From Macrostomum lignano (lineage: Eukaryota): a stretch of 64,000 nt of DNA. The notes under the pieces are model-generated. The model was not told the DNA's origin. It ran no database searches and was given only the letters and a program-made list of their open reading frames with translations. A program made the position numbers and the translations under genes. How positions within the stretch are numbered: the first letter of the stretch is position 1; each line of letters starts with the position of its first letter. The stretch is from the NCBI GenBank assembly GCA_002269645.1, contig NIVC01000175.1:744001-808000 (forward strand). The letters are read 5' to 3'. Positions 14,231 to 21,600 of the stretch are shown one piece after another.

Positions 14231-15673
14231 ATGATGGAGCAAGCAGGTTCGGCCATAGACAGCTGGTTGGATGCCGCTTACGCCGGTGACTTGAGTCGCT
14301 TGCGCGACCTGCATCAGAGCGGGCTTGTGCAGCTGGAGTCGAGGGCGGATTTCGACAAGGTCAGCTTTTTTACCGCGGGTACTTTGTAGAGTTGCTCTTG
14401 TCATGTACAGGACATGTACTGGACTAGACTGGACATGCAAATTGCTGAGATTTTAAGGCTTATAAGGGGGGAATTGCTGAGATTTCAAGGCTTATTGGGG
14501 GAATTGTTGAGATTTTAAGGCTTATAATGGGGGAATTGTTGAGATGCCAAGGCTCACGGGGGAGAATTGCTGAGATGCCAAAATTTTAGGGAGGATCGCT
14601 GAGATGTGAAGGCTGAGGTCAGAAGCTACATTTACTGTAGTTTATTCAAAAATTGTATTTTATTCTTTAGTTGGCCCCCAACGGAGCCAACCCCAAAATG
14701 GCCACTGTCTTCACGAATACTTTACCTAACAAGAAACAGGAAAAACTGTTTCTACAAATCCTGCCATGATTTATTTCCACGATATAAAAAGGCCGAGATG
14801 AAGTCGGCCACGGCGCTGCTGCTGGCCGCGGCGGCTGATCGGTACCACTGCACTCGGTGGCTGCTGTCCACCGGCACCGATCGCAAAGCCGCTCTGCCCG
14901 ACGGTCGGACTGCGCTGCACTTGGCCTGTCAGTTCGGCTGCCCTCTGGTCACGGCCGCACTGCTGGAGGCCGGCTGCGATGTTGACGCCACGGACTCGGT
15001 CAGTGACATGCTGAGGATGGTCGGCTGCTCAATTGCTGAGTGCCAAGTGCTGTTAAACGGGTTGCCAAGCTTTGCCTAGGGGGGACTTTCCCAAGCTAAA
15101 GACTGCACAACCCAAACCTATGGGATCACCGCCAACCCAACAGTGAAATCAGGAGGACGTGTGCAAAGACTGTCCCACCCAGACCATCCACCAACGACAA
15201 AACCCGAGTGTGATTTGGAACTTTTTTGGAAAGCAAGTTTGAGAGTGGGACCCCAGCTAGGCTTCATATTGGAGCGAGTCTGGGCAGCTTATTTACCAGG
15301 GGCGAGTCTCCTGTCAGGTAGGCCTCCAGGATAAAACCAGCTCCTATAGGGCTGCTAGAGACAAGACCCTTTCACTACCCAGCTCTAAAAAGTCCAAGCC
15401 AAGGGGTTGGAGAAGGAGCAAAGGGCTCAGCCGGTTGTGTTACATTGTTATCGATTGAAATAGTCGTGCTTGATTAATATCAACTAAAACATTTACAGCA
15501 TTTACAGTTACTTATAGTAGGCTGTTCAGAGTAGAAACTTGCTATATAACGGAGTTAATATATAGCCTGTCTATTGTCCTTGCCAGGCTGGTCGGCAACC
15601 GCTGCAACTGGCCGCTTCTCCCGAGTGCATTCTCCTGCTACTCAAGGCTGGTGCTTCAATTCAGCCTGCTCAC
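14231..15673 (+). CDS. Ankyrin-repeat module (exons 1-3 of the TRPM model, about 141 aa, 3-4 repeats)
   Basis: Translations: [16 protein letters not shown]; [24 protein letters not shown]; [31 protein letters not shown]; [22 protein letters not shown]. These fit the ankyrin consensus GxTxLHxA...LLxxGAD. Confidence 0.9.
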
Positions 15674-18600: not shown

Positions 18601-21600
18601 TGAACTACCATGTGCTCTCAGATTGAACTACCATGTGTTCTCAGATTGAGCTACCATATTCTCAGATTGAACTACCATGTGTTCTCAGATTGAGCTACCA
18701 TATTCTCAGATTGAACTACCATGTGTTCTCAGATTGAACTACCATGTGTTCTCAGATTGAACTACCATGTGTTCTCAGATTGAACTACCATGTGTTCTCA
18801 GATTGAACTACCATGTGTTCTCAGCTTGAACTACCATGTGTTCTCAGATTGAACTACCATGTGCTCTCAGATTGAACTACCATGTGTTCTCAGATTGAAC
18901 TACCATGTTCTCCAGGCGAACTCTTTAATCTGAGCTTTAACTCCAGCAACCTGCTCCCCCCCCCCTCAGGTCTGACCCCGTAGTCTGCGCCTGCGGCGGC
19001 ACCGCCGAAGGTCATCCAAGCGATATGCTTCCATCGGACAATGATTCCGGCGGATTCGGTGGCAGCATCAGGCGAAAGTTCTCACTGAAGCCACAGCAAC
19101 AGCAGCAGCAGCAGCAGCAGCAAAAGCAAGATGTTCCAGCAAATGAATTAGACTACCTGGCTGAGGCTCTGCCGACCAATGCTTTCGGTGAAATCGAATT
19201 CTCCGGAATGAAACAGTTGGCTAAGGTTCGTTCGGTTCAATTCGTGATGCTTATTTGGCTCGATTCCAAGTGCAGTCGCATTAATTTTGGGGCTAAATTG
19301 GAATCTCGGTTTGCATGGCTCTGCTTGTGCAATTAATTGTCTTGAGGACCAACCCCCAAGGCACAGTGAAGTGTACATGCTTAACGATAAATAAAAAGTT
19401 AGGGCCGCTGATCACTCCTGTGTGAGTGTGTGCCTGCTCAGGGGAGTCGGCAAAATGGGCAGTAATGCCTCTCGCCGGTTGTGTCACAATGTCGCTTAAA
19501 GTGCACCAGGGTGCACACAGCCTCCTGGCTCTAATTAGAATGAGACATCAATAAATTGATGAATTTCAGTTCGTCCGACTCGACTCCAACACACCCGAGG
19601 AGGCGCTTCACGAGCTGCTGGTCAAGAAGTGGGAGATGAGTCGGCCAACCCTTGTCATCAACATTTTTGGCGGTGACTTTGAGAAGAAGAGACAGTTGAA
19701 AATGATATTTAAGAAGGGACTGTGGAAAGCGGCGGAGAGCGCTGGTGAGAGAGTGATTGATTTGCATTCTGTGCTGTTTTGTAGTTTTGCAGAAATTGGC
19801 GATTTATAGGTACTATGAAAAGTTGTTGCAAAAAACTGAGTTCAAAGTAGCTAATCAGCTTCCCACATCCTCGGTTGCTGGGCCACCAGCCTCCCAGATC
19901 CTCAGTTGCTAGGCCACCAGCCTCCCAGATCCTCAGTTGCTGGGCCACCAGCCTCCCAGATCCTCAGTTGCTGGGCCATCAGCCTCCTCCCAGATCCTCA
20001 ATTTCTGGCCACCAGCCTCCCAGATCCTCAGTTGCTGGGCCACCAACCTCCCAGATCCTCAGTTGCTGGGCCACCAGCCTCCCAGATCCTCAGTTGCTGG
20101 GCCACCAGCCTCCCAGATCCTCAGTTGTTGGGCCAGCCTCCCAGATCCTCAGTTGCTGGGATGCCCTCCCTGATCCTCAGTTTCTGGACCAGCCTCCCAT
20201 GTTTTCAGTTGCTGGGTTGCCCTTCCAGTTCCTCAGTTGCTGAGCCAGCCTCCCAGATCCTCAGTTGCTGGGCCAGCCTCCCAGATCCTCAGTTGCTGGG
20301 CCACCAGCATCCCAGATCCTCAGTTGCTGGGCCAGCCTCCCAGATCCTCAGTTGCTGGGCCAGCCTCCCAGATCCTCAGTTGCTGGGCCAGCATCCCAGA
20401 TCCTCAGTTGCTGGGCCAGCCTCCCATGTTCTCAGTTGCTGGGCCAGTCTTCCAGATCCTCAGTTGCTGGGCCAGCATCCCAGATCCTCAGTTGCTGGGC
20501 CAGCCTCCCAGATCCTCAGTTGCTGGGCCAGCATCCCAGATCCTCAGTTGCTGGGCCAGCCTCCCAGATCCTCAGTTCCTGGGCCAGCCTCTCAGATCCT
20601 CTCAGTTGCTGGTGATCCCTTTATGGCCCACTTTGAGTTACTTTCACTTTCAAAAAATGACTTTTCAAGGCCGAGACAAGTCGAACACACAAGGAGGTGA
20701 GGAACCAGATTGCTCCTGCATGCCCCAGGAGGAAAATGCTGATTGTTGCAACCTCATTCTTGCTTGGTTTGAGATTCTTAATTAACTTTTTCCGTGTCGC
20801 TTTGAATTGTATTCAGAGTTGAGGCAATGTTGTAATCGGTTGGTGACTTTGAATATGAATGAGCCATGGAGTGTCAAAAATCCGGTTTTAAAAATGTCGA
20901 GAGCATTATATGCAATCTCTGACAACAGAATGCGCATTACAAAGCCATTATCTTATACCTAATGCAGGTTTAAATAATGTTTGAAACTTATCTAACAAGT
21001 TCAGTGCTTATCTAACAAGTTCAGTGCTTATCTATCAAGTTCAGTGCTTATCTATCAAGTTCAGTGCTTATCTAACAAGTTCAATGCTTATCTAACAAGT
21101 TCAGTGCTTATCTAACAAGTTCAGTGCTTATCTAACGAGTTCAGTGCTTATCTAACGAGTTCAGTGCTTATCTAACGAGTTCAGTGCTTATCTAACAAGT
21201 TCAATGCTTATCTAACAAGTTCAATGCTTATCTAACAAGTTCAGTGCTTATCTAACAAGTTCAGTGCTTATCTAACAAGTTCAGTGCTTATCTAACAAGT
21301 TCAGTGCTTATCTAACAAGATCAGTGCTTATCTAACAAGTTTAGTGCTAATCTAACAAATTCAATGCTTATCTAACAAGATCAGTGCTTACCTAACAAGT
21401 TTAGTGATTATCTAACAGGTTAAATGCTTATCTAACAAGTTCAATGCTTATCTAACAAATTCACTGCTTATCTAACAAGTTCTTTTATTATCTATCACTT
21501 TACACCTAATCTCAGGTTTCTTTACTTTTTCCTTGTCTAACATATAGAGTGCAGCCATTAATACAATAATTGTGAGTTCTTTACCCAAATATCGCTTTTA

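What the first reader, a model, noticed from the sequence alone, without database searches (positions are those of the whole stretch)
14231..19225. Canonical ankyrin repeats spliced in frame onto a TRPM channel
Seen in sequence: exons 14231-14359, 14792-14998, 15587-15673 and 15890-15964 (all phase 0) join 17141-17208 and 18970-19225 in frame. This gives MMEQ...[ankyrin x3-4]...[63 protein letters not shown], whose last part is the recognisable TRPM2-type N-terminal motif (SWI..NIKKKEC / VVCQCG). Exons 4 and 5 have no in-frame ATG, so the channel needs an upstream exon, and the ankyrin exons are the only candidates I found. Established: N-terminal canonical ankyrin arrays define TRPA, TRPC, TRPV and TRPN, whereas characterised TRPM channels start with MHR1-4. 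Inference: an exon-shuffled ANK-MHR-TM-NUDT9H channel with an extra scaffolding or ligand-sensing module. I cannot tell whether other flatworm TRPM_PZQ orthologues are already known to carry this module.
Basis: partly seen in the sequence, partly recalled or inferred. Interest (0 to 1): 0.85.

Follow-up and report, generated by a model that had tools for sequence, protein, structure and literature searches.

The report
Ankyrin gene beside flatworm TRPM channel
A small four-repeat ankyrin gene sits just upstream of a praziquantel-type TRPM channel gene in a Macrostomum-like flatworm and could be spliced onto it in frame. It is somewhat more likely that these are two neighbouring genes, with the channel taking its start codon from the flatworm spliced leader.

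Summary
All six proposed exons have GT..AG borders and join in frame. Exons 1-3 encode four canonical ankyrin repeats (Pfam Ank_2, 83-88 bits). Exons 5 and 6 carry the conserved TRPM N-terminal SW..C..F/CxCG motif. They continue into a SLOG + TRPM2-domain + ion-channel + NUDT9H gene that ends at 54624.

The inference is not secure. It assumes the missing ATG must come from an upstream cis exon. Macrostomum adds a 35-nt spliced leader ending in ATG to 20-30% of its genes (PMC8629364). Flatworm leader AUGs are documented initiator codons (PMC9851317, PMC12582326). The acceptors of exon 4 (15890) and exon 5 (17141) are both phase 0, so the leader ATG would open the channel reading frame directly.

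The ankyrin gene also has its own possible end: read-through of exon 3 gives VRPC-stop, with AATAAA at 15790, about 95 nt before the exon 4 acceptor. That is an operon-like layout. Two M. lignano paralogue loci have the same phase-0 acceptor and no ankyrin exons upstream.

Estimates: separate genes about 0.5, real fusion about 0.28. RNA junction reads would decide.

The parts
14231..14359 (+). Ankyrin gene exon 1 (ATG; N-terminal capping repeat)
   Evidence: ATG at 14231 and donor AAG|gtcagc. The translation continues the ANK consensus into exon 2.
14792..14998 (+). Ankyrin gene exon 2 (repeats 2-3)
   Evidence: Phase 0-0, weak acceptor aaaaag and donor TCG|gtcagt. It holds the core of the Pfam Ank_2/Ank hits.
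15587..15673 (+). Ankyrin gene exon 3 (repeat 4, C-terminal cap). If not spliced it reads on to VRPC and TGA at 15686-15688.
   Evidence: Strong acceptor ccttgccag. The candidate donor CAC|gtacgg is non-consensus at +4. Read-through gives a 145-aa protein with Ank_2 at 88.5 bits.
15790..15795 (+). AATAAA polyadenylation signal. It lies 102 nt after the read-through stop and 95 nt before the exon 4 acceptor.
   Evidence: AATAAA occurs 41 times in the 64 kb + strand, so chance presence in this 216-nt interval is about 13%.
15890..15964 (+). Leader exon ('exon 4'), 25 aa [25 protein letters not shown], phase 0-0, no ATG. It is either the ANK-TRPM linker or the first, trans-spliced TRPM exon.
   Evidence: Acceptor tgtgtttttttcag and donor AAT|gtaagt. 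It is one of only 4 strict pseudo-exon hits in the 64 kb window, with none on the - strand. It sits in the same position as leader exon B of M. lignano Mlig001812.
16894..16935 (+). Speculative alternative terminal exon of the ankyrin gene ([13 protein letters not shown], then stop), followed by AATAAA at 16951-16956
   Evidence: Acceptor ccacccttgcaag. The AATAAA starts 16 nt after the stop and lies about 185 nt before the exon 5 acceptor. There is no independent support.
17141..17208 (+). TRPM exon carrying [22 protein letters not shown](R). Phase-0 acceptor, no ATG.
   Evidence: Aligns with the SW..C..F motif of solved TRPM structures. The same 68-nt exon and acceptor position occur in M. 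lignano L001 at 9566-9633, and the same acceptor position in L002 at 10844. Synonymous changes at W-Y-P-L show it is coding.
17258..18908 (.). 23-nt tandem repeat (72.5 copies) filling the intron between exons 5 and 6
   Evidence: TRF score 2952.
18970..19225 (+). TRPM exon with the CxCG motif (VVCACGG), poly-Q and the start of SLOG (FGEIEFSG). In-frame Met at 19025.
   Evidence: The Met corresponds to the annotated start of the M. lignano models.
19570..24995 (+). TRPM SLOG/MHR1-2 and MHR3 exons: 19570-19744, 21624-21790, 22478-22810, 23376-23503, 24040-24397, 24694-24843, 24942-24995
   Evidence: Boundaries were set by tblastn with the M. lignano proteins plus GT..AG and frame. LSDAT_euk scores 165.9 bits and the TRPM2 domain 55 bits.
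27031..54624 (+). Remainder of the TRPM gene: MHR4, S1-S6 with pore, TRP helix ([15 protein letters not shown] 42593-), coiled coil, NUDT9H. Stop TAA at 54622-54624.
   Evidence: tblastn with full-length M. lignano paralogues. Ion_trans and TRPM2 domains. NUDT9/TRPM2 NUDT9H matches at E = 1e-12 to 2e-13. Stop codon.

Best explanation
There are two transcription units in an operon-like tandem.

(1) A small stand-alone ankyrin protein of four repeats and about 145 aa. It is encoded by exons 14231-14359, 14792-14998 and 15587-15673, extended to the TGA at 15686-15688. Its mRNA is polyadenylated after the AATAAA at 15790.

(2) A TRPM2/TRPM_PZQ-type channel with SLOG/MHR, six transmembrane helices, a TRP helix and NUDT9H, ending at 54624. 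Its 5' end is made by spliced-leader trans-splicing. The favoured acceptor is that of the leader exon at 15890; the alternative is the exon 5 acceptor at 17141.

The Macrostomum leader ends in AUG and both acceptors are phase 0. The leader therefore supplies the initiator Met, giving either M-ASNQEK...[14 protein letters not shown]... or [10 protein letters not shown]....

Shown here: the exon structure, the frames, the domain content, the stop and polyadenylation signals, the conserved acceptor position, and the absence of ankyrin exons at two M. lignano paralogue loci.

Inferred: that trans-splicing and polyadenylation actually occur at these sites. Occasional read-through transcripts spliced from 15673 to 15890 may exist as a minor chimeric isoform.
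For: - The M. lignano leader CGGTCTCTTACTGCGAAGACTCAATTTATTGCATG ends in ATG. It is added to 20-30% of genes, and 15% of genes lie in operons with a modal repeat-adjusted spacing of about 100 bp (PMC8629364). The leader is conserved in M. cliftonense and M. hystrix (PMC10468722).
- All reported flatworm leaders end in AUG, which serves as initiator. In S. mansoni more than 40 cDNAs require it (PMC12582326, PMC9851317).
- Leader-ATG joined to exon 4 or to exon 5 is in frame and open.
- That places the conserved Trp at residue 7 or residue 32. This lies within the range of characterised TRPMs: in TRPM7 the alignment already starts at chain residue 3, Trp is at about 10 in TRPM4 and about 62 in TRPM2.
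- The ANK domain is complete at the end of exon 3. Read-through adds VRPC and a stop. The AATAAA at 15790 lies 95 nt upstream of the TTTCAG acceptor of exon 4.
- The closest public homologue is M. lignano Mlig032314, 72-75% identical. Its locus has the same 68-nt exon with the same phase-0 acceptor, no in-frame ATG and no ankyrin exons in 9.5 kb upstream. All three public models start at an internal Met downstream of the conserved, clearly coding motif.
- The paralogue Mlig001812 also has no ankyrin exons within 10 kb upstream.
- Flatworm operons are frequently mis-modelled as chimeric fused genes. Cis-splicing onto operon-resolving acceptors is very rare (PMC12582326).
- A limited survey found no protein combining SLOG and ANK.
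Against: - I had no transcript data of any kind, so neither leader addition nor polyadenylation at these sites has been observed.
- The exon 3 end does offer a usable donor (GTACGG, with A at +3 and G at +5) exactly in phase 0. I estimate this at roughly 7% by chance.
- Validated donors in this gene are often just as weak, for example GTTCGT, GTTGGC and GTTGGT.
- The AATAAA in the 216-nt interval has about a 13% chance expectation, so it is only mild support.
- In the paralogue Mlig001812 the equivalent acceptor is used in cis with upstream ATG-bearing leader exons. The family is therefore not uniformly dependent on the leader AUG.
- A weak cis first-exon candidate exists in the M. lignano locus at L001 7248-7316.
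- Only a minority of trans-spliced flatworm genes need the leader AUG.
- I could not establish whether L001 is an orthologue or a paralogue of the window gene, nor the species of the window.
Confidence: 0.5

Rival explanations
1. A single gene encodes an ANK(x4)-linker-SLOG/MHR-TM-NUDT9H channel. Exons 1-3 are cis-spliced through exon 4 onto the TRPM exons. Such a gene could arise when an upstream ankyrin gene's read-through transcript captures a former trans-splice or leader-exon acceptor. The ANK module would add a protein-binding or tethering arm to each subunit of the tetramer.
For: - All junctions are canonical and in frame.
- Exon 4 looks like a genuine internal exon with a very strong acceptor and donor.
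- No other ATG-bearing cis first exon was found between the myosin gene and exon 5.
- The phase-0 donor at the end of exon 3 has acceptable +3 and +5 positions, comparable to validated donors here.
- All ANK exons are phase 0-0, which suits exon shuffling.
- In the paralogue Mlig001812 the same acceptor is cis-spliced to upstream coding exons.
- A flatworm TRPM-like channel with N-terminal ankyrin repeats, TRPM_MCLZ, exists (PMC11731825).
Against: - The argument from the missing ATG fails once the leader AUG is considered.
- The ankyrin unit keeps an intact-looking 3' end: a stop 4 codons after exon 3 and AATAAA at 15790.
- Two M. lignano paralogue loci lack ankyrin exons upstream.
- No SLOG-containing protein examined carries ANK.
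- The ANK module has only generic ankyrin similarity.
- Chimeric models of neighbouring flatworm genes are a known artefact.
- In-frame compatibility of two phase-0 boundaries is expected by chance at least one time in three.
Confidence: 0.28
2. The TRPM gene has its own conventional first exon with an ATG that I failed to recognise. It could be very short, have a non-consensus donor, or lie outside the scanned intervals. It would be spliced to exon 4 or exon 5, and the ankyrin gene would be unrelated.
For: The paralogue Mlig001812 has exactly such small leader exons of 57 and 87 nt. Weak candidates exist, such as window 15796-15813 (MQLSVA|gtgcca) and L001 7248-7316.
Against: Scans for an ATG followed by a phase-0 donor found nothing with a consensus donor in window 10139-17140. 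tblastx found nothing conserved upstream between the window and L001. Any such exon would have to sit inside or overlap the ankyrin gene.
Confidence: 0.1
3. Translation of the channel starts at the internal Met at 19025, as in the public M. lignano models. Exons 4, 5 and the 5' part of exon 6 would then be untranslated.
For: An in-frame Met is conserved at this position in the window and in M. lignano (MLPSD... versus MDFPHPG...). Three public models start there.
Against: The upstream peptide (WYPL.L.R..CV.[FY].P.R....C.CG...E.H) is conserved between the window and M. lignano through synonymous codon changes. It also matches the N-terminal motif of solved TRPM2, TRPM4 and TRPM7 structures. It is therefore under protein-level selection.
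Confidence: 0.04

Closest known systems
Flatworm spliced-leader trans-splicing with the leader's 3'-terminal AUG as initiator, and Macrostomum operons (Cheng et al. 2006 as cited in PMC9851317 and PMC12582326; Ustyantsev & Berezikov 2021, PMC8629364)
   Same: Neighbouring genes lie on the same strand. A polyadenylation signal sits about 95 nt before a YTNCAG-type acceptor. The downstream coding exon has no AUG of its own, and its phase-0 acceptor puts the leader AUG in frame.
   Different: Trans-splicing at this locus is inferred, not observed. The species of the window is unknown, and so is its leader sequence.
TRPM_PZQ / TRPM2-like channels (Sm.TRPM_PZQ Smp_246790; Ml.TRPM_PZQ; human and Nematostella TRPM2)
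   Same: SLOG/MHR1-2, TRPM2-like domain, ion-transport domain, a TRP helix with Glu at W+10 as in free-living flatworm TRPM_PZQ, and a C-terminal NUDT9H. The best hits are flatworm TRPM_PZQ-type proteins.
   Different: No described member has canonical ankyrin repeats ahead of the SLOG domain. Orthology to Ml.TRPM_PZQ and praziquantel sensitivity were not tested. M. lignano has at least three such paralogues.
TRPM_MCLZ (Smp_333650), the meclonazepam-activated flatworm TRPM-like channel
   Same: A flatworm TRPM-clade channel reported to have N-terminal ankyrin-repeat modules (PMC11731825, PMC12861061).
   Different: TRPM_MCLZ lacks the MHR1/2-SLOG domain and the NUDT9H domain and has three exons. 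The window channel has both domains and more than 25 exons.
ANK-bearing TRP subfamilies (TRPA, TRPC, TRPV, TRPN/NOMPC)
   Same: If the fusion is real, a canonical ANK stack would sit at the cytoplasmic N-terminus of a TRP channel. The module resembles ankyrin-R/B, DARPin and NOMPC repeats.
   Different: Those families lack SLOG and NUDT9H, and their ANK arrays are contiguous with the pre-S1 region. Here only four repeats would be tethered by a linker of about 30 residues that a low-confidence model predicts to be disordered, ahead of the MHR domains.
Chimeric gene models and read-through chimeras of adjacent flatworm genes (PMC12582326)
   Same: Two complete, unrelated coding units on one strand, separated by a short gap, can be joined in frame by a gene modeller.
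   Different: Here a phase-compatible donor and acceptor do exist, so a real chimeric mRNA is mechanistically possible.

Membership tests
TRPM channels (TRPM2/TRPM_PZQ type) | N-terminal SLOG/MHR1-2 domain | tested here: met
   Pfam LSDAT_euk at 165.9 bits and LSDAT_prok at 65.6 bits. Aligns with TRPM2, TRPM4 and TRPM8 structures at E down to 2e-49.
TRPM channels (TRPM2/TRPM_PZQ type) | Six-TM ion-transport domain and TRP helix | tested here: met
   Ion_trans at 27 bits on the S3-S5 exon. The TRP helix [12 protein letters not shown] lies in ORF 42593-. tblastn with full-length M. lignano paralogues covers S1-S6 at 68-82% identity.
TRPM channels (TRPM2/TRPM_PZQ type) | C-terminal NUDT9-homology domain | tested here: met
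   Matches NUDT9 (1q33) and the NUDT9H of TRPM2 structures at E = 1e-12 to 2e-13.
TRPM_PZQ orthologue | Orthology to Sm/Ml.TRPM_PZQ, the conserved praziquantel pocket and activation by praziquantel | tested here: inconclusive
   The best hits are flatworm TRPM_PZQ-type proteins, and Glu sits at TRP-helix position W+10 as reported for free-living flatworms (PMC9910428). M. lignano has at least 3 paralogues. The pocket residues were not compared, and function cannot be tested here.
   No transcript data were accessible. Sequence allows the fusion but equally allows leader-AUG initiation.
TRPM_MCLZ-like channels | N-terminal ankyrin repeats replacing the SLOG domain, and no NUDT9H | tested here: not met
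   SLOG and NUDT9H are both present. The definition comes from PMC11731825.
Flatworm operon / leader-AUG-dependent gene | Same-strand upstream gene with a polyadenylation signal and a short intercistronic gap (under 1 kb, mode about 100 bp) | tested here: met
   Stop at 15686-15688, AATAAA at 15790 and acceptor at 15889/15890. The criteria come from PMC8629364.
Flatworm operon / leader-AUG-dependent gene | First coding exon lacks an AUG, and its acceptor places the leader's terminal AUG in frame | tested here: met
   Exons 4 and 5 have no in-frame ATG and both acceptors are phase 0. The same holds for M. lignano L001 exon 5.
Flatworm operon / leader-AUG-dependent gene | Leader-containing reads at the acceptor and poly(A) reads at the upstream gene's end | not testable with these tools
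   No RNA-seq access. The window's genome is not in the look-up collection.
Canonical ankyrin-repeat protein | At least 3 tandem 33-residue ANK repeats above the Pfam threshold | tested here: met
   Ank_2 at 83-88 bits, Ank at 50-53 bits. Matches ankyrin-1/2 and DARPins in the PDB. The helix pairs in the low-confidence AF2 model are compatible with several repeats; the fourth pair is only half resolved.

The most novel reading that the evidence does not exclude
The locus really makes an ANK(x4)-linker-SLOG/MHR-TM-NUDT9H channel. It would have formed when an upstream ankyrin gene's transcript captured the phase-0 leader or trans-splice acceptor of a TRPM_PZQ-type gene. This would be the first TRPM that combines a canonical N-terminal ankyrin stack with an intact SLOG domain. 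It would also be a lineage-specific domain accretion caught next to the still recognisable 3' end of the donor gene.
Probability: 0.28. Interest if true: 0.7.

Novelty: new member of a known kind. Interest (0 to 1): 0.35.

Why it matters
TRPM_PZQ-type channels are the praziquantel target family, so their true N-termini matter for expression constructs, structural work and comparative pharmacology.

If the favoured reading is right, three things follow. Public Macrostomum models of this channel are truncated at an internal Met, because the real initiator comes from the spliced leader. The conserved SW..C/CxCG exon should be included in constructs. This locus is also a clean example of how flatworm operons tempt gene modellers into chimeric proteins.

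If the fusion is real, it would be a new TRP architecture. It would also illustrate how trans-splice acceptors can promote gene fusion.

Tried and rejected
- **Word-indexed search with the 274-aa chimera.** It returned only generic ankyrin proteins at no more than 51% identity. Listings from this tool never exceeded about 590 aa, so missing full-length TRPM or myosin hits mean nothing.
- **Species identification.** The GPCR ORF is not on record. The myosin search gave no Macrostomum hit. The genus assignment rests on the 72-75% TRPM hit and a shared interspersed repeat.
- **Conserved upstream exon.** blastn and tblastx between the window and M. lignano L001 found only exon 5 and the repeat.
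- **Exon 4 homologue in M. lignano.** Only an insignificant 13-aa match at E = 0.16.
- **Splice-site strength as a discriminator.** Rejected, because validated TRPM introns here use donors such as GTTGGC and GTTCGT and acceptors such as caag. The YTNCAG trans-splice motif is also matched by several cis acceptors.
- **GC3 per exon.** Does not separate ANK from TRPM exons.
- **Spliced-leader gene.** None found in the window or in L001.
- **AlphaFold2, single sequence, 274 aa.** Low confidence (pLDDT 46). It shows only helix pairs compatible with an ANK stack and a likely disordered linker.
- **Exhaustive representative search with the fused query.** The list was swamped by giant ankyrin proteins. 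The SLOG hits with long N-terminal extensions turned out to be tandem-SLOG gene models with no significant ANK domain (one has a sub-threshold Ank_5 hit).
- **Supplements.** Those of PMC9910428 and PMC12582326 held nothing on the relevant genes. 'Mlig032314' appears in no paper.
- **Upstream + strand gene in L001.** None could be identified.

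
Full report
**What is in the sequence**

The window is a repeat-rich eukaryotic sequence. Each is flanked by AG and GT. The first five begin in phase 0. Joined together they give an open 822-nt reading frame encoding the quoted 274-aa peptide.

Pfam scores the first 140 residues as canonical ankyrin repeats: Ank_2 at 83.3 bits (E = 1.9e-23), plus Ank, Ank_3, Ank_4 and Ank_5. 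The repeat consensus continues across the exon 1/2 and exon 2/3 junctions, so these three exons form a genuine spliced unit encoding four repeats. The similarity is generic, to ankyrin-R/B, DARPins and NOMPC.

**The downstream gene is a TRPM2/TRPM_PZQ-type channel**

- Exons 17141-17208 and 18970-19225 align with the N-terminal SW..C..F and CxCG motif of solved TRPM2, TRPM4, TRPM7, TRPM3 and TRPM1 structures.
- The following exons give LSDAT_euk (SLOG) at 165.9 bits, a TRPM2-like domain and Ion_trans.
- The C-terminal exons match NUDT9 and the NUDT9H domain of TRPM2.
- tblastn with full-length Macrostomum lignano paralogues traces the gene to a TAA at 54622-54624.
- The closest public protein is M. 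lignano BOX15_Mlig032314g1, 72-75% identical. Parasitic-flatworm TRPM_PZQ-type proteins follow.
- A short interspersed repeat is shared with M. lignano.

I therefore take the window to come from a Macrostomum-like flatworm. The exact species could not be determined.

**Is exon 4 real?**

Exon 4 (15890-15964) encodes a 25-residue hydrophilic linker with no ATG. A strict scan asked for a CAG acceptor with a pyrimidine tract, a GTRAGT donor and an open phase 0-0 frame. It returned four hits on the + strand of the whole window. Two are homology-supported exons, one is exon 4 and one lies in a repeat. There were none on the - strand.

Exon 4 is thus very probably a real exon that splices to exon 5. 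It occupies the same position as the second leader exon of the M. lignano paralogue Mlig001812.

I confirmed part of this. Neither exon has an in-frame ATG, each has an in-frame stop upstream if left unspliced, and I found no convincing alternative cis first exon between the myosin gene and exon 5.

The argument, however, ignores spliced-leader trans-splicing.

- In M. lignano a 35-nt leader, CGGTCTCTTACTGCGAAGACTCAATTTATTGCATG, is added to 20-30% of genes.
- 15% of genes lie in operons whose repeat-adjusted spacing peaks near 100 bp (PMC8629364).
- The leader is highly conserved in M. cliftonense and M. hystrix (PMC10468722).
- All reported flatworm leaders end in AUG. That AUG is an established initiator, and more than 40 S. 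mansoni cDNAs need it (Cheng et al. 2006 as cited in PMC9851317 and PMC12582326).

The acceptors of exon 4 and exon 5 are both phase 0. Leader-ATG joined to either gives an open channel reading frame, M-ASNQEK...[14 protein letters not shown]... or [10 protein letters not shown].... The conserved Trp then falls at residue 32 or residue 7. That is within the natural range. In TRPM7 the alignment already starts at chain residue 3, and the Trp is at about residue 10 in TRPM4 and about residue 62 in TRPM2.

**The ankyrin unit looks self-contained**

The fourth repeat, a C-terminal cap, ends with exon 3. If the GTACGG after 15673 is not used as a donor, translation adds VRPC and stops at 15686-15688. 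A canonical AATAAA follows at 15790, 95 nt before the TTTCAG acceptor of exon 4. The resulting 145-aa protein scores 88.5 bits for Ank_2.

This layout of stop, short 3' UTR, polyadenylation signal, a gap of about 80-100 nt with a U-rich tract, then an acceptor is the classic operon arrangement. A second, weaker variant is a tiny terminal exon at 16894-16935 followed by AATAAA at 16951, about 185 nt before the exon 5 acceptor.

AATAAA occurs 41 times per 64 kb here. Its presence in the 216-nt interval has about a 13% chance expectation, so it is supportive but not decisive.

**Comparative evidence**

In the M. lignano Mlig032314 locus (L001) the same 68-nt exon is present at 9566-9633, encoding NREQQWYPLRLDRPICVNYRPK(R). 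Its acceptor is at the identical codon position and it has no in-frame ATG. The next exon continues ...NSSLCVCGQPVERH... before the Met at which all three public models begin. Synonymous differences at W-Y-P-L show that this region is translated. M. lignano therefore faces the same missing-ATG problem without any ankyrin exons in the 9.5 kb upstream, where the next called gene is an OTU gene on the opposite strand.

A second paralogue, Mlig001812 (L002), solves the problem differently. Two small cis leader exons supply an ATG and 48 residues, and they are spliced to the same phase-0 acceptor. It again has no ankyrin exons within 10 kb.

So this intron position is old. Leader exons come and go in the family, and ankyrin exons are not a family feature. 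Whether L001 is the orthologue or a paralogue of the window gene is unresolved.

**Survey for the architecture elsewhere**

The six flatworm N-terminal TRPM proteins retrieved carry SLOG domains only. In an exhaustive HMMER search of 1.84 billion representatives with the fused query, the SLOG hits with long N-terminal extensions proved to be tandem-SLOG models. None has a significant ankyrin domain; one (P0245) has only a sub-threshold Ank_5 hit (23 bits against a cut-off of 27). The survey is shallow, because giant ankyrin proteins crowded the list.

The literature describes N-terminal ankyrin repeats in the TRPM-like channel TRPM_MCLZ. That channel lacks SLOG and NUDT9H (PMC11731825, PMC12861061), so it is not the same architecture.

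**Weighing the models**

For the fusion:
- A phase-0 GT with acceptable +3 and +5 positions sits exactly at the end of the ANK domain, which I estimate at about 7% by chance.
- Validated donors in this gene are often just as weak.
- Exon 4 is real, and no other ATG exon is visible.

For separate genes:
- The leader AUG removes the need for the ANK exons.
- The ankyrin gene has an intact-looking 3' end.
- The paralogue loci lack ANK.
- No ANK+SLOG protein was seen.
- Flatworm operons are repeatedly mis-modelled as chimeras, whereas cis-splicing onto operon-resolving acceptors is very rare (PMC12582326).

Both alternatives invoke uncommon events: a lineage-specific fusion, or dependence on the leader AUG. 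My estimates are:

| Model | Probability |
|---|---|
| Separate genes, leader-donated start | about 0.5 |
| Genuine fusion as a regular product | about 0.28 |
| Unrecognised conventional first exon | about 0.1 |
| Start at the internal Met (19025) | about 0.04 |

These four sum to 0.92. The remainder is left unassigned for arrangements I did not model.

A mixed outcome is plausible. In it the main product is leader-capped TRPM, with a minor read-through chimera alongside.

**Verdict**

The interpretation cannot be decided from sequence, and I lean against it. The most likely reading is an ordinary, if instructive, flatworm arrangement. The fusion remains a live possibility of moderate probability and moderately high interest. 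A handful of junction reads would settle it.

Noticed in passing
L001 (NIVC01000384.1) 9566-10000; proteins P0121, P0127, P0128: All three public M. lignano models of Mlig032314 start at an internal Met (MDFPHPG...). They omit the conserved upstream coding exons NREQQWYPLRLDRPICVNYRPKR-NSSLCVCGQPVERH.... The true N-terminus is probably missing from the annotation, possibly because the initiator comes from the spliced leader.
   Followed up: partly
window 17258-18908: A 23-nt tandem repeat (AACTACCATGTGTTCTCAGATTG, 72.5 copies, 94% matches) fills almost the whole intron between TRPM exons 5 and 6. The same intron is only about 280 nt in M. lignano.
   Followed up: partly
window 759-10138 (+): Exons of an unconventional myosin-Ie-like gene (motor and TH1 tail) lie upstream on the same strand as the ankyrin and TRPM genes. 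Most of the 4-kb gap to the ankyrin gene is minisatellite (10154-10555, 11213-11709, 13028-13735). The repeat-adjusted spacing is therefore short, and a three-gene co-oriented cluster is conceivable.
   Followed up: no
window 58994-60700 (+): A single-exon 568-aa ORF encodes a rhodopsin-family GPCR (7tm_1 at 68 bits, Srw-like at 63 bits), about 4.4 kb downstream of the TRPM stop.
   Followed up: partly
window 1354-1416, 8394-8454, 19350-19461, 26880-26946, 43427-43545; L001 8910-9048: A short interspersed repeat (...CCAAGGCACAGTGAAGTGTACATGCTTAACG...GGGCCGCT...) occurs at least 5 times in the window, mostly in introns. It is 71-86% identical to a copy in the M. lignano locus, so it looks like a genus-wide SINE-like element.
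   Followed up: no
L002 (NIVC01001444.1) 10001-10057, 10655-10741, 10844-; proteins P0233, P0249, P0381, P0382: M. lignano has at least three TRPM_PZQ-like paralogues: Mlig032314, A0A1I8HSQ2 and Mlig001812. Mlig001812 has two small cis leader exons spliced to the same phase-0 acceptor, five codons before the conserved Trp. The Glu at TRP-helix position W+10 is residue 1218 or 1240 in the two full-length Mlig001812 models. The published Ml.TRPM_PZQ (E1495) is therefore not Mlig001812.
   Followed up: partly
window 19856-20612 and 9500-10000: A 28-nt minisatellite (CAGCCTCCCAGATCCTCAGTTGCTGGGC) lies in a TRPM intron. A related copy lies near the 3' end of the myosin gene. Both create long spurious ORFs ([14 protein letters not shown]...).
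   Followed up: no
L001 9520-9565: The exon 5 acceptor of the M. lignano gene is preceded by an extremely AT-rich tract containing two AATAAA motifs, with two CCAAT boxes 200-260 nt upstream. I could not tell whether this marks a promoter with an outron or the 3' end of an unannotated upstream gene. No coding exon was recognisable upstream.
   Followed up: partly
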